Source: Trichoplax adhaerens
Lineage: Eukaryota > Animalia > Placozoa
Assembly: GCF_000150275.1 (NCBI RefSeq)
Contig: NW_002060945.1
Location: forward strand, 9,254,011 to 9,318,010
Direction of reading: 5' to 3'
Length of the DNA stretch: 64,000 nucleotides
The notes under the pieces were generated by a model. It made no database searches. It saw only the letters and a program-made list of their open reading frames with translations, and had not been told where the DNA came from. Positions 18,328 through 32,890 of the stretch are shown piece by piece (position 1 is the stretch's first letter; each line of letters opens with the position of its first letter). The position numbers were made by a program, and so were the translations under genes.

Positions 18328-19669
18328 CTACAAAGTGGTTGTTACTTCGCCCGATCGGATGGCATCGTAATATTTATCAATGGCCTTTTGCATTTCAGAT
18401 TTCTGTAATGCTTTCAGGAAGACATCTAATGTACCTGATTTTCCCTTACTGCAAGACCAGGTCAAAAAAAGTTTATAATACTGATTATAACTGCCACGCT
18501 CATCGTGACTAATATCGTCAGTATCTTGCTCCTTTAGCTTAAGTTTATTTGCCACTTTCTTAAAATCGTTTCTCTGAAGCCGAGAAGCGAAAAAATCGAA
18601 TGTTTGACGTAGGTTATCTCCTGGAAAAAAAATATGATATAAGTTTATGTAAACGGTAATTTAACGATTTATATAAGCATATGCAGTATTAACTGGATAA
18701 TTAAGTATATTACCATTGCGAACAATTAGAAAAATCAAGAGTGTAATTATATTTATCTTTGGATTGATACGCTTATTACTGTACAAGCAGAAATTACTCA
18801 GGTATAGCTTAAGCGCTCACGTAGTTTGCTAGTTAATTGAGAATGAGTGTATAAATATAGCCATGTCCTCTACTGTACTGTACAATCTTTTGGATGAAAT
18901 AGTAAAAGCATAAAATGGAGTACCTTGCATGCTAGGGTAATACAGTATAGTATAAATTTCTGAACCTTGTATTGACAGAGCTTTCCTATAATCATATCTA
19001 TTAGTCAAATGTTTCACTCGTGATATTTTACGTACTTGTATACCAAATATAACACATGTATCTCAGCACATAATGCATGCTATGTATATTATAATTCTGC
19101 ATATACATGAATGTATAGTAACTGCTTCCATAAATTAATCCTAAATCGCCTGCCTACTATCCATAACTGCATACTGCAATAGGTAACTATATATGTTTTT
19201 TTTAATATAGAAATATATACGTATATCAATGGGATGAATTAAATTATACTGCATTTTTACCCCATCTAGCGAGATCTTGCTCAGATAAGGCATTATTACT
19301 TAAATCTGTATCCTTGTTTTCATCTGGTCTGGCTGTATTTTTATCGACATTGATATCTTTCTTTATCTCTTCCCCAATATGTCGACAATTACATGAAGGT
19401 TGAGTAATGATTTTTAAAAAGACGTGGAATTGATTAACCGTTTTACTGAAAAGTAAATTTAACAGTTTGAAATTGGCATCAGAATCGATCTGCAATTGCG
19501 ACAAATTATTAGTAATATTTCGCAATTCCTCCAGAGATAAAACACCTTCGTTGAATAATTCCGAAGCAACTTGCTTAGTTTGTAAATTATCTTTTAGTGA
19601 TGTGAAATTTTTCCTTAAAGCCTCAAATTCCTTTTGATCATCTTTTAAAGGAGATTCACCATCGGCCAT
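18328..19669 (-). CDS. CARD + death domain adaptor protein (RAIDD/CRADD-like architecture)
   Basis: Exon 1 (19669-19261) is CARD-like: LRKNFTSLKDNL..VASELFNEGVLSLEEL..LLNLL..FHVFLKII. A phase-1 GT-AG intron follows. Exon 2 (18620-18328) is DD-like: DFKKVANKLKL...YKLFLTW..KGKSGTLDVFLKAL. Confidence 0.78.
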
Positions 19670-20831
19670 GATGATTGCTAACGTGGCATGCGAATAGAAA
19701 GTTCTAGAGCAAGAGTGCTACTACGCGTCTAAACGCTATGACTTTGTATAGCTAGGACACTGCCTGGTCGATCTCCGACCACCCAACACGTTGCCATGCA
19801 ACGTTAGAGCTTGCTTGTGAACAGTAGTGCGTTTAAGGCGTACGATTCTAGTCTGCCGGCACAGTAAAATGGCCAGCAATCATAGTCAGCCATAGAATTA
19901 TCGAATCTGTCTTTTCTTTTTATTTTAGTAGTTCTTGCTTTTAGTAGTCCCTGGTCACTAATACTCATATTTAGAGATTTTTACAAGAAAATGATACAGT
20001 ACGATGCAACTGTATAGCACAGTGAGGCAGCTGGATTGCGGTTACTTTCGGTACTGTGCAAAGATATTGGCTCCAGCCCTCTAAGCGCAATATCGTTTTT
20101 AAGAACGATTTGTATATATATACAACAGGTAAAATGAGGTCTGTTTCCATCCCTAGTGCAGCCTACTGACTGGCTAGCAAAAAAGAAGCAGGGTCGACAA
20201 ATAGAATCCTGTCTCGCACTCTCGTTGCACTGCAGGGGTGCAGGTCTACCACCACCTTACTAGTGCATTGCACGAGCAATAGGCAATTCTGAAGATCGAT
20301 CCATCTTCCCTGTCTGTGTACACCCCATTTGCAATCAAAAATATAAAAAAAAAAAAACCTTCCTATCTTCCATCCCTTCCGATATTTTCTGTAGCAAACA
20401 TCAATATCCATTCTGTTCAGTTCGAGCTGTACTACAATTATTTTCGATAGCCTTAAGAGATTGCTAGTCCCCCAAAAGAGGTGTGGCTTTTAGCGAGTCG
20501 TCAAGATTGAAACTATGCGCAGTCTCATAGCCCCTTTTCCTAATTCGAAAATCGACAAGTTGTCGCCCCCCTTTAACATCTTCTCCCACCTTTGCAAGCC
20601 TACCATCCCTGTTTTTCTTCACCAATTTGGCTGCTTCAACTTGTTTTACTCAAGCCGACAAGTAAGCTGTAGGTAAGTGTAGAAAAATGCTGCTTGTAAT
20701 GGTTATTGATTGTGTAGAGAGTACTTGAAAGTTGATCAGTAAAGAGTAAGTACGCTTGTATCTTACGTCTTGTGATTAATTGCAGGCAGCTTTGAATTAA
20801 TTGATCACACGGAGAATTGCAACTATCTGAA

Positions 20832-21674
20832 ATGGCTGAAGAAAGACAATCTACCGAGTCGAAAGCACTACAATGGAACGCCAATGATGAAACGTTAACT
20901 GCATTCTTAGATCGATTGCAAGTAGAATTAGATGATCGAGAAATTATCGATAATCAACAGTGTGTCTCCTGTTTAATTCGAGCACTTCCACCTCTGATAC
21001 GAAATGGACTGAAAGCCATGTCCAATGATCAAGACGTAACACAGCAAGATTACCAACAAGTTGTTGAAGAAATCAAGCAGCAATGCCTACCTCAAGCGCA
21101 ACCCTCTAAAACGGTGTGGTGGCATCGAGCACAACTCTATCAACGAAAGCAAAGATCCAAAGAATCGATTGAACAATATAAAAATGTGCTATTAACGCTT
21201 GCCAAACACTGCCAGCTCCATTATCATCAAGATATGATGTTGACCATGGTATTTATAGCTGGCTTAAGAGAAAGATCCATTCGACGTCGTCTTCTCGATT
21301 ACCAACAAGAACTCAACTTTATCAAAGTAGTCGATTATGCTTTAGAAATTAAAGCAGAAAAATCAGCCGTGGAGACTACACAAGATAATACGCGTATCAA
21401 TCATGACAGTGATCATCATGATGACCATGCTGAAGTCGATGATAACAGTAAAAATCCAAGAAGAAATCGAAGGAGAGAAAAAAGACCACAGCAAGCGCGA
21501 AATACCTATCATGAATCCAAAAAGTCTTGCTATCGTTGTGGAAGTTTCGCTCATCTAGCTGCAAGTTGTACCTATAGAAGACTATATTGCGACTGGTGTG
21601 GAAAGAAAGGCCATATAGTTCGTGAATGTTATGAAAAAATGGACTATGATGACGATTATAACTATTATGATTAA
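20832..21674 (+). CDS. Stand-alone Ty3/Gypsy (Mag-like) Gag protein, 280 aa, with two CCHC zinc knuckles; probable domesticated gene
   Basis: Uninterrupted ORF. Capsid major-homology-like segment LYQRKQRSKESIEQY...LAKHC...FIAGLRERSIRRRLL. Knuckles CYRCGSFAHLAASC and CDWCGKKGHIVREC. No protease, RT or integrase follows, and I see no LTR pair. Confidence 0.85.
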   Translation: MAEERQSTESKALQWNANDETLTAFLDRLQVELDDREIIDNQQCVSCLIRALPPLIRNGLKAMSNDQDVTQQDYQQVVEEIKQQCLPQAQPSKTVWWHRAQLYQRKQRSKESIEQYKNVLLTLAKHCQLHYHQDMMLTMVFIAGLRERSIRRRLLDYQQELNFIKVVDYALEIKAEKSAVETTQDNTRINHDSDHHDDHAEVDDNSKNPRRNRRREKRPQQARNTYHESKKSCYRCGSFAHLAASCTYRRLYCDWCGKKGHIVRECYEKMDYDDDYNYYD

Positions 21675-23384
21675 AAATAATAATAGGAACCGATCGATAG
21701 TCACTCCAATAGAGTTATCCTAGTAATGATAAACATATTAACCAACATGACTTAGCCTCGGTTATAACAGTATTTAGGAAACGGATATATCTGCTTCTAT
21801 TTATTGTAACCCATTAATATGCAACTTATCCTATCTTTACTATTTTCAATTAATCAATCGCAAATTGCACTACATCGTTATAGATATAGTCCATTTGTAA
21901 TTGAAAAATTATGTTGAAATTGTTCTCTTATTGATGTTATTCGTATCATGGCTTTCCAGTCGCGAGCCATAGGTATTTCTACCTTATTTATTCTCAACAT
22001 CCAATTTGTTACTGTCAGGCCTTTATTATCAAAATCAACTAGTATAGAAGCTAATTCTTATGTTAGTTGTGTTGTACCATGTTGATGACAAAGAATATGT
22101 CTACCACTTCATGTGCAATGTACTGTATATTTTGTATAATCTTCGTGGATTAAATGATATTTAAGTAATAAAAACTTGTATGTCAACTCTTCGTCTATAA
22201 CACAGTTATAATCCTTATGTTGTCTCTTATTTCATGTTTAAGCAATGTGGCTGTTGACTATCTTTTCCATGTCCACTACATGAAAATCCTGTCCTTTTCG
22301 ATAACGCTACCTTGTTAGTTAATCCTTCCCTTTATCATCGATAGCAGATAAATTTACCTTACCAATGACTACACGATATTTTGTAAGTATCTCATCGAAA
22401 AACATCCAGGTACCTTGAATAACAAATTTTTATTTGATCAGTAGCTACTTTTGCATGTCGAAGTAAAGAGTTGCTATAGTATACTTTAGCATTGAACTAC
22501 TGGCTATCAAGCAATGTAGCTATTAACTACTTTCTCCTTTGCCTACTGCGTTGAATCCTTTTCTTTCCATGCTTCTATTCTTTATTGGATAATCCTATTC
22601 TCCTTACGATCTATAAATACGTATATCAGACAACTACCTCCTGAGAATTAAATAGGATGTCTACAAATGATGTGGACGGTATTTTGCAAGCATCTCATCG
22701 ATATACATCTTGATACTTTTACGATAGCAAACTTTATATTTATCAAAGTATAAAATCCACTTGTACACCATAATGTGCGAAGCGAGAGTTTCCACAGTGT
22801 ATCTTAATGCAGAAGTACACAATGACGATGATTTACAGGAATTATCGTATGTAGAATAATTCATACTTTCATGACAAGAAGATAATTTGGACAGACTAAT
22901 GTGATAATTAATCTATACTACGTATATTCCATGATACTTTTTTAATACAGAAAATAGTTGTTCAGTTTACTGTAGTACCGATACTTTAAACCCATCTATT
23001 TACTGTTAGTCCTTTACTGCATTCTTAAACATTAATCATATTTGATATATATAGGTTATATATCAAACATACGAGTACCTGGTAAATCGATAATGACTAA
23101 TAAGTGTGGTAGTAGCGTTAGCATAATGGATTAGTTACCAGAGTCAATAAAACAGATCAAAGCAATACGCTGCCAAATTAAAAAAGACTATCTTGCCTAC
23201 TTACTATACAACTGTAAGCTATACAATGCAAGCAATAATTCTTGGCTATAAACTAGTAAAGTAAGAAAGGCAATAAAAAGTATTAAGCTATTTCCACTAA
23301 AATTGTATCAAATACCGTACCGGATAAAAATTATAATGACGGATCACGAGTATGATGGAATTCATTCCGTAAGGACGTCAGTTG

Positions 23385-26300
23385 TCATAATATAGAACAG
23401 CAACAGCAATATTTTTGTAATATAGTTTCTTTCCTTGATGGGAATAAAGGTGCTTCTTCCCCTATGTATTATAAAAAAAAATATAATTGATAATTAATAT
23501 AACTTCATAGGGCAAGGATAATATAAACTACCCATTCAATTAGTTGCTACAGCAATAAACAATTAATCATTGATTTATGTATGAATCTATAAATAGATAG
23601 CATAATGATATCTGACAAAATTTTTACATGTACGCGTATATTAACACTAATTATGTTCTAGGATTTAATTTACCATTCTAGTTATATGAATAGAATCACA
23701 TATCAATACCTGATATTAAGTCTGAGGAATTTGGAAGCTGAATTTGAGCTGTTTGTAACGGCAGTCGAGACTTATTCTTATTTGTATCTACATGTAACAA
23801 ATTGAAAGACATAATTAGTATTATTAGAATTGCTAACGGCTACTGCATAACTTATAACTTTATAAAGCACACCAAGAGGCAGCGCATAGATAGAGTTTTG
23901 CGTTTGAATAAATAATCAGGACTAACATAAAAATTTAAGTGATGGAATTGAACAAAGTATTTTATGTTAGAACTACTACATGATATGTAACTCCATAGAT
24001 CTTATCAAAAGTAAGTTCAAAAGTAGAATTTTGAGATTGAACAAGATCATCAGGACTACTAGCTGTGGTAGTATATTTTACCTGACTTCATAACTATCAA
24101 GTTACGGATTATACATTTATATAGAAAAAATCAGCATAAAAATCCAAATGATGATGGTGTTGGTGAAGATGGTTTACAACTATCAGCGCTAATAGCACTC
24201 TATAAAAGCCATTTGTATCATTATTGTGAAATGCCTAAGGAGTCTACGTCTGTAGACTCTTCGAACCCTCCATCACACTATTAAAACACTAAATTTCTAG
24301 CTCATCGTACCAGTTATAAAACCAGAATTAAATTCTTCACCTAATTGCGCGCCATCGAAATTATCATCTACGTGAGGAATAATTATAATTAATTCATTAT
24401 TGGAGATGTAAACACCAATTTACGATTAGGAATAGAAATTATTTGCCAGCACTATATAATTAGTAATTTCTATTGCCTGGTAATCGCATCACTTCAAGTT
24501 TATCCTAGTTAAGTAATTCAGACAGCAATTTAGTTACCGTACCATGATTATTAATTGATAGATCCCGTTGTTTAAGATTATTTATTTCTTCCATCCGTTG
24601 AGATAGATCATAAGCCATAGATCGCTTATCTTGTAGTAATCTGTTATTTTCAGCTACAATTATTTAGAGGAAGGAATATACTATAACAATTAACTTTACT
24701 TTTCGTTACTGGGAAATTTTAATAGAATTGTTCCAGATTATGATATAATTGATATATTTCATTGTTGATTCTTGTAGAGTCTTATTTAATCATCATACCT
24801 TGTAGGATTTCAATTTTGTTATTTAATTGCAAAACTATAGTAGAATTGGACGAATCTTCTTTATCAGATTTGTTACTGGTTTCGAATTTTTTAATAAACG
24901 CACTAACTGCCGGTTTTTCTTCTGCTGTTTCTGCAATAAAATTGATCGGTACGATTTGAAATAGATCTATTTCGTAATAAGCCTATGACGAGAAAATGTG
25001 TCGCCTTTTAGTCAATAAACAATTCCTATAGCAACCTGATGACTTGCTTGTAGACATAGATGGCTTTCCATCCTCGCTATGTGAAGCATTACTATCTGTA
25101 CGCTTTCTTGTCTCATCCTTCTTGTCTTTCGCTTCAGTAATTACATTCATATCCGCTAATTATGGTGAGAAAATTATAAAAATTAGTTGATATACATTAG
25201 CTTTACATCGCAATAGTCTAAATCTATACAGTATCCAACTCAGTAATTTAAACTAACACATTAAGTTTTGAACTCTTTCTTGTAAGAGCAAAATCTTTTG
25301 ATGTTTGGCCGTTGATTTTTTTGCAGGCGATCCCAACTCAATTGTTCCGCTTGTTAAATCATCTATATATATAAATAAATTAATGTTGGTCATAACTGGT
25401 TATCCTTAGTATTTCAATTTTAAATTAAAGAGACTATCACGATGGAAATTAATCGCTTGCAATAATAGATAGGAATAGCTTATGCCTAAGTTCCCGGAAA
25501 TTTACTAAATTCGGCATTTTACAATATGATAAAAACCTTTGTAGATTATACAATACACTTCATGACCGCATACCTAATAATTGCCATAACTTGAATACTA
25601 GCCGTTTTATTTCTTCTTCTCGATCTAACATAATCTTTTGCGAAATTCTTTTCTCTTGATATAGTCCTTTCTGTTCCACTAAAGTAGCAAAGATAGATTA
25701 CTATACTGATACATTGATGGGTAAAATAAATGAAAGCCTAAGTTGTATTAAGACAGTTTAAGCAACGATTAGGATAAATGCGATGGAATTTCTTTAGGCG
25801 TAAGTAATATAAATCAAAGTGATGCCTTATTTTGCATTAATTCAATCGAAAATCAAGCTCCAATTTATCACACATAGTAACTTGGCCACTTTGCTTTCAT
25901 GTAGTTTTAACTCATTTTCTTTCTTTTCTAATTGTTCCTCCAACTGTTTCTTTTCCGAATAAATGGCATCCTTGTCAGCTAGAGATTTTATAGTCAATAC
26001 AGGCACGATAAAAATGTTGAATGGAATTTCCATAAATAGACTATATTAAATGCCAAAGTAGCTTAAATAATAAGCATTAGCTCTTGAGTTATTACAAATA
26101 TTAACACAAATAATATAAAGTAGTGCTATGAAACAAGAGTAAACATTTTTGATTACTCATAGCTTAAAATATGAATTTATTAATTCATTTAAGAATTGAA
26201 AATATGAATTACTGATATCACTATATCGTATGTAGTCAATTACAGCTATTATAGCACTTAAACAGGGGCAAATATTTTTAATTACGAATATTTTGAAATA

Positions 26301-29300
26301 TGAATTTACTAATTAATTTAAGAATTGAAAATATGGATTACTGATACCACTATATCATATGTTACTAATCATAGCTATTAGGGGATAGTTACATAATGAA
26401 TTACATTCGACGTTAATCCTTTTACGTTGGTTCGCTGGAGTATAACGTATTTACTGTTATTGCAAATATTTATTTTTAAGCTAGGGCATTCTTGACAGGG
26501 ACATCTGAGAAGAAATTCTGAAATTTCCCCTTAAAAGTCCCTATTCTTGAGATGATCTAGCGCTAAAAGTATTAGACTTTATCAAAATGATGGCTCGTCT
26601 CTCTAGTATTTGCATAACATTATAAGGTTGGTTCTATCAGTGCTTATGATAGCAAGAATTGGAGAATGCATGCAAACGAAATTTGTTCGTTATAAGAGAT
26701 AGTTTAATTGATGCAACATGATCGTAGATAGAACCGTAAATATGAATTTACCTATGGCGTTCTTTACCTGATACTCTCTCTAAGGTTTTTTGCATGAACT
26801 GCATGGGTTCATTGGAAGTGTTTGTTGGACTTCCATCATTAGACTGTTCACCTTCTGTGGAGGCTAGTTTTCCTGAATAGAGTTGATTAAAATCAATCAG
26901 AATAGTCCTTTTACCTAAGACCACTAGTAGTATTCATTTTTAAAGCGCATAACACAAATAGACGGAGTAAATTCCTTCAATTTGAATAAATCGTTATCAC
27001 AGAATTCCACCTTCTATAAATATATCAAAAATAATCTATTTTGTATCCATTAGGAATAATGCACCAAGATAGATTAGTTCTATAATCTTGGTGATTAAAT
27101 TGCAATTATTAAGTTTTATACAGTAGTAAGTGAAATTTTCATGCAATGGAATAGATCAGTTCTTATAACCAATAACAACAATCGAAAAATTTCTTTTAAA
27201 TTATTCATCTCAATATCCAATTTATATTTCAATGTGAATTCCAACAGGATAATATTGAAATAATAGTAGTGTTACCCATGAAAGTCGAGAGATAATACTT
27301 TAATTAATTATTAATGAACGTTTTTAATGTAAATAAGCAAGTATCTATGGCCTAGTATAAAATAACGATAAAGAATTATCTCGATCATCGATACATAAGA
27401 CTTTATGATATTAACTCAAGCCCTCAAAAATAGGAATAAATTCATTTAGCCTAACAGATATGAACTACTGATAAATCACTTTTACTAGTTAATGTTTAAA
27501 TGTAATATCTATGTAAAGGCTAATATAACATTGTTTAATGGATCCTTAGCAATAAATGTTCTATTCTAACGACTAAAATGGTTAAGGGTTGCTACAAATT
27601 TAATACAAGATATTACATGTTGCATCAGACATTAAACTTAAAAGTAAATACTACAGACGTAATCTCAGAGTCATTATCATTCTGCATTGCTCCAAAGTTT
27701 GTACAAATAACCACTACGGTAAGCTTGGGATCGAGATGGAAAGAGAGGTACAAAATTGGATTAGTAAAAATATTAAGCTACTACGAATGTTATTGCAGCC
27801 AATCTTTTAATAGAAATCATCCTGAATACTAAACGGATGAACAGAACAGATTCTTATTGATTATAGTACGAACAGCTTTGAAGCAATTTAGAAGAAATCT
27901 ACCGTTTAACCTGCAAAATTTACTCAAGATAGTATCGCCAATAAAAATAAAATCGATTTATTTGTTGATGCCGACAAGACGTTAGATAGTAGTGCGATGC
28001 TTTGGGTGACAGTGAAAGATAGGATTAAAGAAACATAGAGACGATATGAACTAAGAGAAATCTCTTACCGTAATTGCCAAACGAATCTGCTCTTCGCCTT
28101 AATTCATGAATTTCCACTTGCTTATTACCGACCTTCTTTTTTAGTGATTCATTCTCTTTCCTTAACGATTCCTTTTCGGCTAATAAAATATGAAGTTATC
28201 GATATTATTCAAGTATCATAGCAGGATTGTAAGAGAATGGTTGCGGCGATATATAATTACTGTTAAATTAATGTACATTTTAATTAGAATGGTATATATG
28301 AACGAGCATAAACTATAGTTTGGAATAAGATGAGCATGGATAACGAGGCAATCTGATGCCATTACTGATCGTAAATGAAGCTCTTGCTAAAATCTAAGAG
28401 CAGGACTAGAAGGCCTAAATCTATGCAACGATTACATTCTAATCCACTACTCGAATAACTTAGTAGAATTGACAATATCCCATTGCTAGATTATAATCAT
28501 CAGCGTGAGATATTCCATTTACTAATTTCATCATCATATTACTTAATCTAATCTATTGAAGCGATCTTAATAAAAGGTGTTAGACTGTCTAGCAAGTGTA
28601 GGATGTTAGCGGATGGTGTGGATATCGGCTAATAAAGTGTTAAGTAATCGATATTCTGCAAGTATTGTAACAAGATTGAACAGATGTGAGGCTATGGTAG
28701 TACATCGATACTGTTAATATACATTGTAATTGTAATTGGATCCATGCACGAGCGAAAACTATAATTTCGAATAAGGTGAGCATGGATTCCGATGGAATCT
28801 GATGCTATTGCTAATCCTAAATGAAGACTCTTACTGAAATCTCTAGGCAGGAAAGATGACCTAAATCAATGCAACGATTGCCTTCCAATCGACTACTCCA
28901 ATAACTTCAAATCTGCAAAGATAGATCAATCAACGAGTAAGATTGTCGATATCTTATTGCTCGATTAACAGCATGCGATGCTCTGTTTACTAATACTATC
29001 GGGTTATTCAATTGAATTTATTGAAGCGATGATAGCAAAAATGGAACTCAATAAAAAGCGTTGAAAGGTGTTTGTTTCTTGTTCATTTTCAATCGACTAG
29101 AAAAGTCTTTCTCATTTTACAGTCAAATTTTCATTCTTTTTGTCCTTTACAAAGTTCTGTTTACTAATTTCATCATGTTATTCAATCTAATTTATTGAAA
29201 GGATCATAGTAAGGGTAGAGCGGTCGAACAAATGTTGAATGCTATTTGTTTCTTGTTCATTTTTAATCCATTCGAAAAGTATATATGCCGCCAACTTTAA

Positions 29301-30974: not shown

Positions 30975-32890
30975 ATTAGAATCGAGTTGTAGCGGCTCGT
31001 CTCTTGATTAAAATTTTGTACTTAAGCATTATGGAAAGGAAACTATTTTAAAGTTGCAAACTGAGGTCCTGTACCTATCGAAGTGAGTGTTTTATTTGGC
31101 TTTTGCCGACGACATGATAGAAGTAAAGATTTCTAAAATCAACGGAAATCGAGTTGTAGCAGCTCGTCTCTTGATTAAAATTTTGTATATAAGCATTATG
31201 GAAAGGAAGCAATTTTAAAGTTGCAAACTGAGCTACTATACCTATCGAAATGAGTATTTTATTTAGATTTTGCCGACGACATGATAGAAGTTAAAATTCC
31301 TAAAATCAACAGCTAGAAAGACTAAAATACTTTTTCAGAAAAGGAAAATATCAATGGATACTTAGGCAAGAAAATGTCTAAAATGCACCATGAAGTATTC
31401 GGCTGGCAGAGTAAAAGGGAATACTGTTTGTTGTTTACTGGCAACATTATGCAGTAGTAAACAAATGTTCCTAGAATTAGCTGATAGGCTGGCTTATATA
31501 ATTCTGCCTTATACAGTAAAAGTGATTCCTTTTATCGTTTGCCGACGACATTATGTAGCAGTTAATAAATATTCCCTAGCACAGCATGATAGACGTAAGG
31601 TGTACAATTATGGGGACTTCTCACGCCTGTAAACGCTTACATTTTTGGCCTTTTATCGACAATATTATGAAATAAAGATTCCTAGAATAAGCCAATAGAA
31701 TGACTGAAAAAGAAAATACTTTAATTCCTAATGAAATCTCTTTCCAATAGCTAATACTTTTGGCGTTTTCCGACGATGTTACAGTAAATAAATATTTCTA
31801 GAACAACCTGATATACACTAGGAATACAACGATAAGTGTAAACTTCTACTCCTAGAATGAATAGATCAAAGGGTATTAAAAAGACTGAAAAAGAAAATGT
31901 AGATCCTGTACATCCATTAAGCAAGGAAAGACTTAAATTACCTAATCAAGCCATTTTCTAACAGCTAATGCTGTTTAACAATCATTAACTGACAATATTA
32001 TAGTAAATAACTATTTCCTAGAACCACCTGATATACGATAGGAATACAACGATAAGTGTAAACTTCTACTCCTAGAATGAAAAGGTCGAAGGGAAAAGAC
32101 TGAAAAAGAAATTGTTGATCCTGTACATCCATTAAGCAAGGAAAGACTTAAAATACCTAATCAAACTTCTTTCTAACAGCTAATGCTGTTATCATTAACT
32201 GACGATATTATAGTAAATAGCTATTTCCTAGAACCACCTGATATACACTAGGAATACAATGATAAGTACGAACTGCTAGCCCTAGAATAAACCAATAGAA
32301 AGGAAAAAGATTGAAAAAGAAAATATCAATACTGTACGTCTAGATATTAAGCAAGGAAGTACTTAATATACTTAGTGAAGCTTCCATCTATAACTATAGA
32401 AGCAAATACTTTTATCCTTTACTGGCGATATTGTCATAAATAAATATCACCTAGTGCAACCCGATCCACGTCTGTTAAAGGAATACAATTTGAAGTAGGA
32501 GCTCTACTCCTATGAGCGCTAACATTTCTTTCGCCTTTTCTCGATGACATGAAATAAAAAATTCCTAGAATAAACTGATACAAAGACTGAAAAAATTTGT
32601 AAATGCGAATACATACTTTACTCAAGAAAATGTTTAAAATACCTAAAGAAGCTTCCTTTTAGTATAGTAGCAGCGAATACTTTTGTCGTTTACCGACAAT
32701 ACTACAGAAATGAATATTCGCTAGAACAACCTGATATACACTGGGGAGTGCAGGTAGAAGTATGAGCTTTTACTTGTAAGCGCTTATAATCTTTTACCTT
32801 TATCGATGACATCAGAGAACTGAAAATCCCTTGACATGAATCAATGTAAAGACTTCAAAAGAAAATGCCAATGCATTCGTTAAGCAAGAT
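30975..32890. repeat. Degenerate tandem-repeat array (units about 170-240 bp)
   Basis: Two near-identical units of about 168 bp (AATCGAGTTGTAGC.GCTCGTCTCTTG at about 30980 and 31147), then diverged units sharing CCTAGAAC.ACCTGATATAC, GACTGAAAAAGAAA and TTAAGCAAGGAAAG. Confidence 0.85.

What the first reader, a model, noticed from the sequence alone, without database searches (positions are those of the whole stretch)
20129..21674. Apparently domesticated retrotransposon Gag (capsid + 2 zinc knuckles) as a host gene
Seen: an intact 280-aa Gypsy/Mag-like gag that stops right after the second knuckle with an acidic, Tyr-rich tail (MDYDDDYNYYD). No protease or pol remnant and no flanking LTRs are visible. 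Upstream are strong splice signals consistent with 5' UTR introns: AG|GTAAGT 20673 to TTGCAG 20785, and CAG|GTAAAA 20129 to TTTTCTGTAG 20394. An AATAAA lies downstream at about 22167. Known: an intronless CDS with introns confined to UTRs is the pattern of domesticated gags (Arc, dArc, PEG10, PNMA), several of which form RNA-packaging capsids. Inference: an independent Gag domestication, possibly a capsid-based RNA transfer or anti-retroelement system. This would be notable if the host is a neuron-less placozoan.
Basis: partly seen in the sequence, partly recalled or inferred. Interest (0 to 1): 0.88.

Follow-up and report, generated by a model that had tools for sequence, protein, structure and literature searches.

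The report
Domesticated retrotransposon capsid gene in placozoans
Trichoplax carries a single, pol-less, LTR-less copy of a Ty3/gypsy retrotransposon capsid (Gag) gene that has stayed intact, in the same chromosomal slot and under purifying selection, in at least three divergent placozoan lineages, so it is a host gene of viral origin in an animal without neurons.

Summary
Window 20832-21674 (+) is an intact 280-codon ORF in Trichoplax adhaerens. It encodes a two-lobed capsid domain, two CCHC zinc knuckles and an acidic, tyrosine-rich tail.

- **Origin:** its closest relatives outside placozoans are Gag-PR-RT-RNaseH-IN polyproteins of Ty3/gypsy elements, at 33% identity or less.
- **No element around it:** I found no pol relic in the 64 kb window and no flanking LTR-like repeat.
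- **Orthologues:** one in Trichoplax sp. H2 and two in more distant placozoan-like lineages known only from short contigs (54% and about 53-57% amino-acid identity).
- **Synteny:** the more complete distant lineage has the same neighbour genes on both sides.
- **Selection:** dN/dS is 0.16-0.24 while synonymous sites are at or near saturation. In a neutral simulation, 0 of 5000 ORFs stayed open.
- **Gene structure:** a short 5'UTR intron (20673-20785) has its donor and acceptor signals kept in all three lineages. The second proposed intron could not be tested. The AATAAA occurs at chance density.

The domestication reading is well supported. The gene is not a sequence member of Arc, dArc, PNMA or PEG10, so it looks like an independent event. 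I found no published description of it.

Function is inferred only. Most likely it forms an RNA-binding, capsid-like assembly. Transcription and genome-wide copy number could not be checked with these tools.

The parts
20832..21674 (+). Complete single-exon CDS of the domesticated Gag (280 aa plus stop)
   Evidence: Called as a 280-aa gene in the public T. adhaerens annotation and as a 284-aa gene in Trichoplax sp. H2.
20871..21095 (+). Capsid N-terminal lobe, residues about 14-88, four predicted helices. It includes the strongly conserved QWN.N.ETLTAFLD motif.
   Evidence: AlphaFold2 model built on a 91-sequence alignment; pLDDT is mostly 84-94. Alignment.
21114..21401 (+). Capsid C-terminal lobe, residues about 95-190, five predicted helices. 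E111 and L120 belong to an MHR-like motif that is nearly invariant in the family.
   Evidence: Foldseek top hits are Arc CTD, dArc1, PNMA2, MLV CA, Ty3, Copia and the PEG10 CTD.
21402..21527 (+). Low-complexity linker: a His/Asp-rich stretch followed by an Arg-rich stretch. It is predicted disordered and evolves fastest. The 12-nt in-frame indel between H1 and H2 lies here.
   Evidence: pLDDT 46-54. pN/pS 0.56. Indel.
21528..21569 (+). Zinc knuckle 1, C233-C246 (CX2CX4HX4C), with an aromatic Tyr after the first Cys
21588..21629 (+). Zinc knuckle 2, C253-C266 (CX2CX4HX4C), with a conserved Trp
21630..21671 (+). Acidic, Tyr-rich C-terminal tail (5 Tyr in 14 residues). It is conserved in all placozoan copies and absent from 105 transposon relatives.
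20673..20785 (+). Candidate 5'UTR intron (113 nt, GTAAGT...TTGCAG). Matching 86-nt and 101-nt introns occur in the two distant lineages.
   Evidence: aligned acceptor. Not confirmed by RNA data.
20786..20831 (+). Last 46 nt of the 5'UTR, between the acceptor and the ATG
   Evidence: inferred
20129..20394 (+). The signals are present but the intron is untested.
   Evidence: The upstream region does not align with other lineages.
22167..22172 (+). AATAAA 493 nt after the stop codon, at chance density
   Evidence: 1.64 per kb on this strand
19244..19669 (-). Upstream synteny anchor: first coding exon of a Death-domain gene, head to head with gag and 1.16 kb from its ATG
   Evidence: Orthologous exon in L005 971-1405(-).
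18457..18627 (-). Upstream synteny anchor: next exon of the Death-domain gene
   Evidence: tblastx to L005 2-172, 58% identity
23379..23477 (-). Downstream synteny anchor: last exon of the 391-aa gene
   Evidence: tblastx to L006 3110-3208. Gene call.
23708..23764 (-). Downstream synteny anchor: penultimate exon of the same gene
   Evidence: tblastx to L006 4247-4303, 79% identity

Best explanation
Shown: this is a host gene derived from the gag of a Ty3/gypsy LTR retrotransposon. It became fixed before the sampled placozoan lineages split and has been kept by purifying selection since. It has lost pol and the LTRs. It sits between the same two host genes in divergent lineages. It has a host-type structure: a short conserved 5'UTR intron followed by an intronless CDS.

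Inferred (about 0.45): every part a Gag needs to build a particle and hold RNA is preserved. These are a two-lobed capsid domain with the MHR-like motif, and two knuckles with their stacking aromatic residues. The protein therefore most likely self-assembles into capsid-like oligomers or shells that bind RNA, as PEG10 and dArc1 do. The placozoan-specific acidic Tyr-rich tail stands where the protease used to begin. It may regulate the basic nucleocapsid region or serve as a docking or modification site. Whether particles leave the cell is unknown.
For: - **Homology to Ty3/gypsy Gag:**
- **Capsid fold:** the model has pLDDT 83.7, and the Foldseek top hits are all retroelement capsids. The family profile hits dArc1 at 3.4e-6 and PNMA2 at 2e-4.
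- **No pol, LTR or second copy:**
- **Orthologues and two-sided synteny:**
- **Selection:** dN/dS 0.16-0.24 with Fisher p of 4e-8 to 3e-24. None of 5000 neutral simulations kept the ORF, even at 0.17 substitutions per site.
- **Conservation relative to a host gene:** gag (54% aa identity) is better conserved than the neighbouring Death-domain exon (41%, dN/dS 0.47).
- **Single origin:** the placozoan sequences form one clade (SH-aLRT 100) on a long stem.
- **Gene structure:** conserved 5'UTR intron signals.
- **Strongest constraint:** the knuckles plus tail have the lowest pN/pS, 0.26. The tail is unique to the clade.
Against: - No expression data could be consulted.
- Copy number in the rest of the genome was not searchable.
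- The distant orthologues come from short, unnamed environmental or SRA contigs, so their species and taxonomic rank are unknown.
- In one lineage each of the two contigs carries one disabling difference at a different place (L003 and L004). These could be low-coverage errors or real null alleles.
- Foldseek E-values are modest (8e-3 to 0.1), although probabilities are about 1.
- Purifying selection alone would also fit an active transposon. Synteny and the absence of pol are what exclude that.
- Nothing tested here shows assembly, RNA binding or export.
Confidence: 0.8

Rival explanations
1. Anti-retroelement restriction factor. A Gag kept by the host because it co-assembles with, or caps, the capsids of related Ty3/gypsy elements and poisons them. 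Fv1, enJS56A1 and the Ty1 p22 self-restriction factor work this way.
For: The capsid domain and knuckles are intact, so co-assembly is possible. The gene lies head to head with a Death-domain gene, and the arrangement is conserved. That would suit a defence locus.
Against: Averaged dN/dS is low (0.16-0.24) over saturated synonymous divergence. Gag-derived restriction factors more often show arms-race evolution; that is from general knowledge, and site-level tests were not run. No close transposon relative (above 33% identity) appears among the best 150 of 1.84 billion representatives, so no obvious present-day target is visible.
Confidence: 0.2
2. Non-capsid RNA-binding or adaptor protein. The knuckles serve as an intracellular nucleic-acid chaperone or regulator. 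The capsid lobes are reused as a protein-interaction module, as in SCAN domains, MOAP1 or monomeric Arc. No particle forms.
For: Constraint is strongest on the knuckles and tail. The new acidic Tyr tail suggests a new partner or regulation. Several domesticated Gags work without forming shells (general knowledge).
Against: Both capsid lobes and the MHR-like residues E111, L120, L137, G144 and A170 are kept. The capsid part is under clear constraint (raw pN/pS 0.43; pN/pS understates the constraint once synonymous sites saturate).
Confidence: 0.2
3. Not a host gene: a decaying solo gag, or the gag of a still mobile or non-autonomous element that happens to lie here.
For: Its nearest relatives outside placozoans are transposon proteins. 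Pfam scores are below threshold. One lineage shows disabling differences.
Against: Neighbour genes are the same on both sides in a lineage with dS about 2. There is no pol or LTR in four independent contigs. The ORF is intact in H1, H2, L005 and L006, whereas 0 of 5000 neutral simulations stay open.
Confidence: 0.03

Closest known systems
Ty3/gypsy (Metaviridae) Gag, e.g. the 'K02A2.6-like' polyproteins of arthropods and the Ty3 capsid (PDB 6R22-6R24)
   Same: It shares sequence homology over the capsid and nucleocapsid (E down to 5e-20, 25-33% identity). It shares the two-lobed helical capsid fold and the paired CCHC knuckles.
   Different: No protease, RT, RNase H, integrase or LTRs. It is single-copy in the window, sits at a fixed syntenic locus and has a 5'UTR intron. 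A new acidic Tyr-rich tail follows knuckle 2.
Drosophila dArc1/dArc2 (PDB 6TAP, 6TAQ) and tetrapod Arc
   Same: They are independently domesticated Ty3/gypsy Gag genes with the same capsid fold. They are the Foldseek top hits, and the family profile hits dArc1 at 3.4e-6. dArc1 and Arc form capsids that carry mRNA (literature, general knowledge).
   Different: The placozoan protein or profile shows no direct capsid-level sequence match to them at E<=10, so this is a separate event. From general knowledge, Arc has no zinc knuckle and dArc1 has one, whereas this protein has two. The host has no neurons.
PEG10 / RTL (sushi-ichi derived) genes of mammals
   Same: A domesticated Gag that retains capsid plus CCHC and binds RNA. 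The PEG10 capsid CTD superposes well on the model (TM 0.76 on the target, rmsd 2.2 Å).
   Different: PEG10 keeps a protease and a -1 frameshift to a pol remnant and has one knuckle (general knowledge). Here nothing follows the knuckles except the tail.
PNMA family (PNMA2 capsid, PDB 8UYO/8RB3)
   Same: Domesticated Gag. It gives the best whole-capsid superposition (TM 0.55-0.57 on the target) and a family-profile hit at 2e-4.
   Different: No direct sequence match. PNMA2 lacks a nucleic-acid-binding domain and its capsids are not known to package RNA (general knowledge). This protein keeps two knuckles.
[quoted passage not shown]
   Same: It meets their two criteria in kind: shared synteny across species, and evidence of selection (for the criteria; for the data).
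   Different: It is not among their seven animal cases (Arc, dArc, RTL x2, PNMA, SCAN, a beetle gene). The paper's main text does not mention Placozoa.

Membership tests
Ty3/gypsy retrotransposon Gag (by descent) | Significant sequence similarity of the capsid region to Gag of elements ordered Gag-PR-RT-RNaseH-IN | tested here: met
   (E down to 5e-20). (domain order of seven relatives); the capsid part alone hits 8 long relatives (900 aa or more) at library-size E<=1e-3; three of these (P0025, P0032, P0070) are confirmed Gag-Pol.
Ty3/gypsy retrotransposon Gag (by descent) | Two-lobed all-helical capsid fold | tested here: met
   The model has pLDDT 83.7 with 4+5 helices. All top Foldseek hits are retroelement capsids, though E is only 8e-3 to 0.1.
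Ty3/gypsy retrotransposon Gag (by descent) | CCHC zinc knuckle(s) after the capsid domain | tested here: met
   Two CX2CX4HX4C motifs. They match retroviral nucleocapsid at 5e-5.
Active or relic LTR retrotransposon (as an element) | gag followed by pol (PR, RT, RNase H, IN) or recognisable remnants | tested here: not met
   tblastn of 26 long relatives (900 aa or more; seven scanned are Gag-Pol) hits only the gag ORF in the 64 kb window and in L004, L005 and L006.
Active or relic LTR retrotransposon (as an element) | Flanking long terminal repeats | tested here: not met
   No direct repeat pair brackets the ORF within 12-32 kb. Self-blastn of 19-24 kb against the window returns only itself.
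Active or relic LTR retrotransposon (as an element) | Multiple dispersed copies in the genome | tested here: inconclusive
   The window holds one copy. No paralogue appears among database proteins within the searchable length range. The whole genome could not be searched.
Domesticated (co-opted) gag gene, criteria of Wang & Han 2021 | Orthologues at a syntenic position in different species | tested here: met
   In H2 the same upstream genes are called, the DNA is collinear and 99.4% identical, and there is one 912-nt indel. The distant lineage has the Death-domain gene upstream and the 391-aa gene downstream. The family rank of those lineages is unknown.
Domesticated (co-opted) gag gene, criteria of Wang & Han 2021 | Evidence of purifying selection | tested here: met
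   Nei-Gojobori dN/dS 0.16-0.24, Fisher p<=4e-8. Neutral simulation gave 0 of 5000 open ORFs.
Domesticated (co-opted) gag gene, criteria of Wang & Han 2021 | Transcribed as a host gene | not testable with these tools
   No RNA-seq access. The only indirect support is the conserved 5'UTR intron signals.
Arc / dArc | Sequence orthology to Arc or dArc capsid domains | tested here: not met
   phmmer of the protein and hmmsearch of the placozoan-only profile against all PDB sequences match only nucleocapsid knuckles at E<=10. Only the broad 91-sequence transposon-family profile reaches dArc1.
PEG10 / RTL | Sushi-ichi-type Gag with a retained protease or frameshifted pol remnant | tested here: not met
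   No protease or pol lies downstream. No direct sequence match.
PNMA | Sequence orthology to PNMA capsid domains | tested here: not met
   No direct match. Similarity is seen only at the fold level and through the broad family profile.
Gag-derived restriction factors (Fv1-like) | Recurrent positive selection, and activity against a related element | not tested
   Only pairwise averaged dN/dS was available (0.16-0.24). Site models need more genomes, and activity needs experiments.

The most novel reading that the evidence does not exclude
Placozoans, animals without neurons or synapses, make an endogenous virus-like particle from an independently domesticated Gag that still has a full capsid and two RNA-binding knuckles. 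They use it to package and move RNA between cells. A lineage-specific acidic Tyr-rich tail acts as the switch for RNA loading or release. This would show that capsid-mediated RNA transfer is not tied to nervous systems.
Probability: 0.2. Interest if true: 0.85.

Novelty: new member of a known kind. Interest (0 to 1): 0.62.

Why it matters
Domesticated Gag genes with a proven or likely capsid function are known from tetrapods, mammals and insects. A 2021 survey of 2,011 eukaryotic proteomes listed only seven animal cases and none from non-bilaterians (PMC8321522).

This case comes from Placozoa. It is unusually complete, with capsid plus two knuckles, and it is clearly constrained. It gives a simple, neuron-free system for asking what a host does with a retained capsid, and whether RNA-carrying capsids arose repeatedly for cell-to-cell signalling in general. 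The conserved acidic Tyr-rich tail has no counterpart in the 105 transposon relatives examined, so it is a concrete handle for experiments.

Tried and rejected
- **Single-sequence AlphaFold2:** the model was useless (pLDDT 41). It was replaced by a model built on a 91-sequence alignment.
- **Pfam:** all matches fall below the curated cut-offs, so the Gag call rests on HMMER, tblastn and fold evidence instead.
- **H1 versus H2 for selection:** the CDS has one synonymous substitution and one in-frame 12-nt indel, against 2.3 substitutions expected. The comparison has no power.
- **AATAAA as a polyadenylation signal:** it occurs at chance density.
- **Upstream and downstream non-coding DNA across lineages:** it does not align, apart from the splice signals. 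The second proposed intron, the promoter and the 3'UTR therefore could not be tested.
- **JGI metagenome scan for more orthologues:** nothing found. Two further profile searches added only P0170/P0183.
- **Literature:** searches for the H2 locus tag and the SRA run, and for Trichoplax or placozoa together with Gag terms, found no description of this gene.
- **tRNA and Rfam scans of the window:** empty.
- **The 'Mag-like' label:** not tested, because no named reference set was at hand.
- **L003 and L004:** Their natural ORF pieces (P0020, P0021) were analysed separately.
Full report
**1. What is there**

Window 20832-21674 (+) is an uninterrupted ORF of 280 codons. The window comes from Trichoplax adhaerens (GCA_000150275.1, scaffold DS985243.1, near 9.27 Mb). 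The public annotation already calls this ORF as a single-exon 280-aa gene with no domain assigned.

The protein has these parts:
- A helical region, residues about 14-190.
- A disordered linker that is His/Asp-rich and then Arg-rich.
- Two CX2CX4HX4C knuckles, at residues 233-246 and 253-266.
- A 14-residue tail with five Tyr and six Asp/Glu.

**2. Is it a Gag?**

Pfam gives only sub-threshold matches: zf-CCHC 20.6 bits against a 20.8 cut-off, and Retrotrans_gag 17.5 against 24.1. Stronger evidence comes from four other sources.

- A full HMMER pass over 1.84 billion representative proteins gives 2639 hits at E<=1e-3 and 159 at E<=1e-10.
- Seven of the long hits that I scanned have the order (Gag)-protease-RT-RNase H-integrase, which is the Ty3/gypsy arrangement. 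The named ones are arthropod 'K02A2.6-like' polyproteins.
- The similarity is not carried by the knuckles alone. Residues 1-190 on their own hit 53 of the fetched relatives at E<=1e-3, with the E-value scaled to the whole library. Eight of those are 900 aa or longer, and three of them are confirmed Gag-Pol polyproteins.
- An AlphaFold2 model built on a 91-sequence alignment has mean pLDDT 83.7, with 4+5 helices and two well-defined knuckles.

Foldseek of that model against the PDB returns only retroelement capsids at the top: Arc CTD, dArc1, PNMA2, MLV CA, Ty3, Copia and the PEG10 CTD. Probabilities are about 1, but E-values are modest at 8e-3 to 0.1. The viral structure library returns Gag and coat proteins of reverse-transcribing viruses. 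A profile of the 91 sequences hits dArc1 (3.4e-6), PNMA2 (2e-4) and Ty3 (9.5e-3) among PDB sequences.

**3. Is it still part of an element?**

No.
- tblastn with 26 long relatives (900 aa or more; the seven scanned are Gag-Pol) finds only 20820-21641 in the 64 kb window.
- No direct repeats bracket the ORF within 12-32 kb.
- The window has no second copy.
- The three contigs from other lineages likewise show no pol within 1.0-2.3 kb downstream of the stop codon.
- Profile searches of 5.8 billion proteins found no paralogue from Trichoplax within the length range that tool can see.
- None of the ten best outside hits comes from a placozoan.

The rest of the genome could not be searched at the DNA level.

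**4. Orthologues and synteny**

Trichoplax sp. H2 has the gene (RDD38620.1, 284 aa) at a collinear locus: the same two upstream genes are called and the DNA is 99.4% identical. The CDS differs by one synonymous substitution and a 12-nt in-frame indel. That is too little divergence to say anything about selection.

Two more distant lineages were found.
- **L005/L006.** An intact 272-aa protein, P0170/P0183, on two Logan contigs from SRR30660616 and SRR30664516.
- **L003/L004.** Two overlapping ORF pieces, P0020 and P0021, on contigs from a marine-biofilm metagenome, SAMN08714533.

Amino-acid identity to Trichoplax is 54% for P0170 and 53-57% for the two pieces.

In L005 the gene upstream and head to head with gag is the orthologue of the Death-domain gene at window 19244-19669(-) and 18457-18627(-). 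In L006 two collinear minus-strand matches downstream correspond to the last two exons of the 391-aa gene, at window 23379-23477 and 23708-23764. The gag therefore occupies the same intergenic slot in a lineage whose synonymous sites are saturated relative to Trichoplax.

A maximum-likelihood tree puts the four placozoan sequences in one clade (SH-aLRT 100) on a stem of 0.99 substitutions per site. Trichoplax is sister to the other two lineages.

**5. Selection**

| Comparison | dN/dS (Nei-Gojobori) | dS |
|---|---|---|
| Trichoplax vs L005 | 0.16 | about 2.0, saturated |
| Trichoplax vs the L003 and L004 pieces | 0.14-0.23 | 1.5-2.1, saturated |
| L005 vs the L003 and L004 pieces | 0.24 | about 0.7 |

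Fisher tests comparing nonsynonymous with synonymous change give p from 4e-8 to 3e-24.

Raw pN/pS by region is 0.26 for knuckles plus tail, 0.43 for the capsid domain and 0.56 for the linker. The adjacent Death-domain exon, a true host gene, is less conserved: 41% identity and dN/dS 0.47.

In a neutral substitution simulation with no indels, 0 of 5000 copies of the ORF stayed open, even at 0.17 substitutions per site.

One caveat concerns the biofilm lineage. Each contig has one disabling difference where the other is intact: L003 has a one-base gap just after the start codon, and L004 has an in-frame stop at codon 138. All the differences between these two 99.1%-identical contigs fall in two small clusters. 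That pattern looks like low-coverage error, but null alleles cannot be excluded.

**6. Gene structure**

The motif G|GTRAGT occurs 3 times and TGCAG|G 9 times on the + strand of the whole window. Yet one of each lies just upstream of the ATG, in the right order, in every lineage (acceptor aligned).

| Locus | Donor-to-acceptor distance | Acceptor to ATG |
|---|---|---|
| Window and H2 | 113 nt | 46 nt |
| L004 | 86 nt | 41 nt |
| L005 and L006 | 101 nt | 86 nt |

The surrounding sequence does not align at all between these lineages. This is good comparative evidence for a conserved 5'UTR intron at window 20673-20785, but it is not RNA evidence.

The AATAAA at 22167 occurs at background density, 1.64 per kb.

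**7. How it probably works**

Shown: a Gag-derived host gene that has been kept for a long time.

Inferred: both capsid lobes are kept. Five of the six capsid residues that are nearly invariant in the family (E111, L120, L137, G144, A170) are kept in every copy, and C127 is Ala in one lineage. Both knuckles and their aromatic residues (Tyr after the first Cys of knuckle 1, Trp in knuckle 2) are also kept in all copies. The selected activity is therefore most likely self-assembly together with RNA binding, giving a capsid-like ribonucleoprotein as in PEG10 or dArc1. I put this at about 0.45.

The tail is a clade-specific novelty. Its D/E/Y content is 79-85%, against a mean of 8% (maximum 43%) for the same position in 105 relatives. 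No relative has more than one Tyr there. An acidic tail next to a basic nucleocapsid could act as an intramolecular competitor for RNA, or as a docking or modification site. That idea is speculation.

The rivals are:
- A dominant-negative restriction factor (0.2). The low averaged dN/dS and the lack of close transposon relatives disfavour it.
- A non-capsid RNA-binding or adaptor role (0.2).
- A non-functional relic (0.03 or less). Synteny and the intact ORFs contradict it.

**8. Comparison with known cases**

By descent this is a Ty3/gypsy Gag. As an element it fails the tests for pol and LTRs. It meets the two criteria Wang & Han (2021, PMC8321522) used for co-opted gag genes, shared synteny and selection, but it is not among their seven animal cases, and that paper's main text does not mention placozoans.

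It is not a sequence member of Arc, dArc, PNMA or PEG10/RTL. Neither the protein nor a placozoan-only profile finds their capsid domains among PDB sequences at E<=10. Transposon polyproteins, by contrast, score down to 5e-20. I therefore read it as an independent domestication. Full-text searches found no paper describing it.

**9. Verdict**

The gene is a new member of a known kind. Its function is untested. The main gaps are transcription, genome-wide copy number, and the identity of the distant lineages.

Noticed in passing
window ~23474-23475 (L001 12643/12644 against L002 12655-13568): Trichoplax sp. H2 has about 912 nt here that T. adhaerens H1 lacks. The site is at the 3' end of the downstream 391-aa gene, close to its last exon. 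It could be an insertion, a deletion or an assembly difference.
   Followed up: no
window 19244-19669 (-) and L005 971-1405 (-): A Death-domain gene (weak Pfam PF00531 hit) lies head to head with the gag gene, 1.16 kb apart in Trichoplax and 1.58 kb apart in the distant lineage. The conserved divergent arrangement could mean a shared promoter region.
   Followed up: partly
L003 (near its position 88) and L004 (codon 138 of the ORF that starts at 210): Two biofilm-metagenome contigs of the same orthologue are 99.1% identical. Each carries one disabling difference at a different place. All their differences fall in two small clusters, which suggests low-coverage errors rather than decay.
   Followed up: partly
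window 21436 (linker of the Gag): H2 has a 12-nt in-frame extra copy (DDNH) in the His/Asp-rich linker. This is length variation that preserves the reading frame.
   Followed up: yes
window 26131-26380, 28176-29280, 30980-31310: Several families of local direct repeats (units of about 120-165 nt; a 446-nt period around 28.2-28.9 kb) lie in and next to the large introns of the downstream gene.
   Followed up: no
window 20163-20411 (-), 20636-20884 (-), 21363-21554 (-): Short antisense ORFs (63-82 aa) lie upstream of or overlap the gag locus. No evidence supports any of them, and they look like chance ORFs.
   Followed up: no
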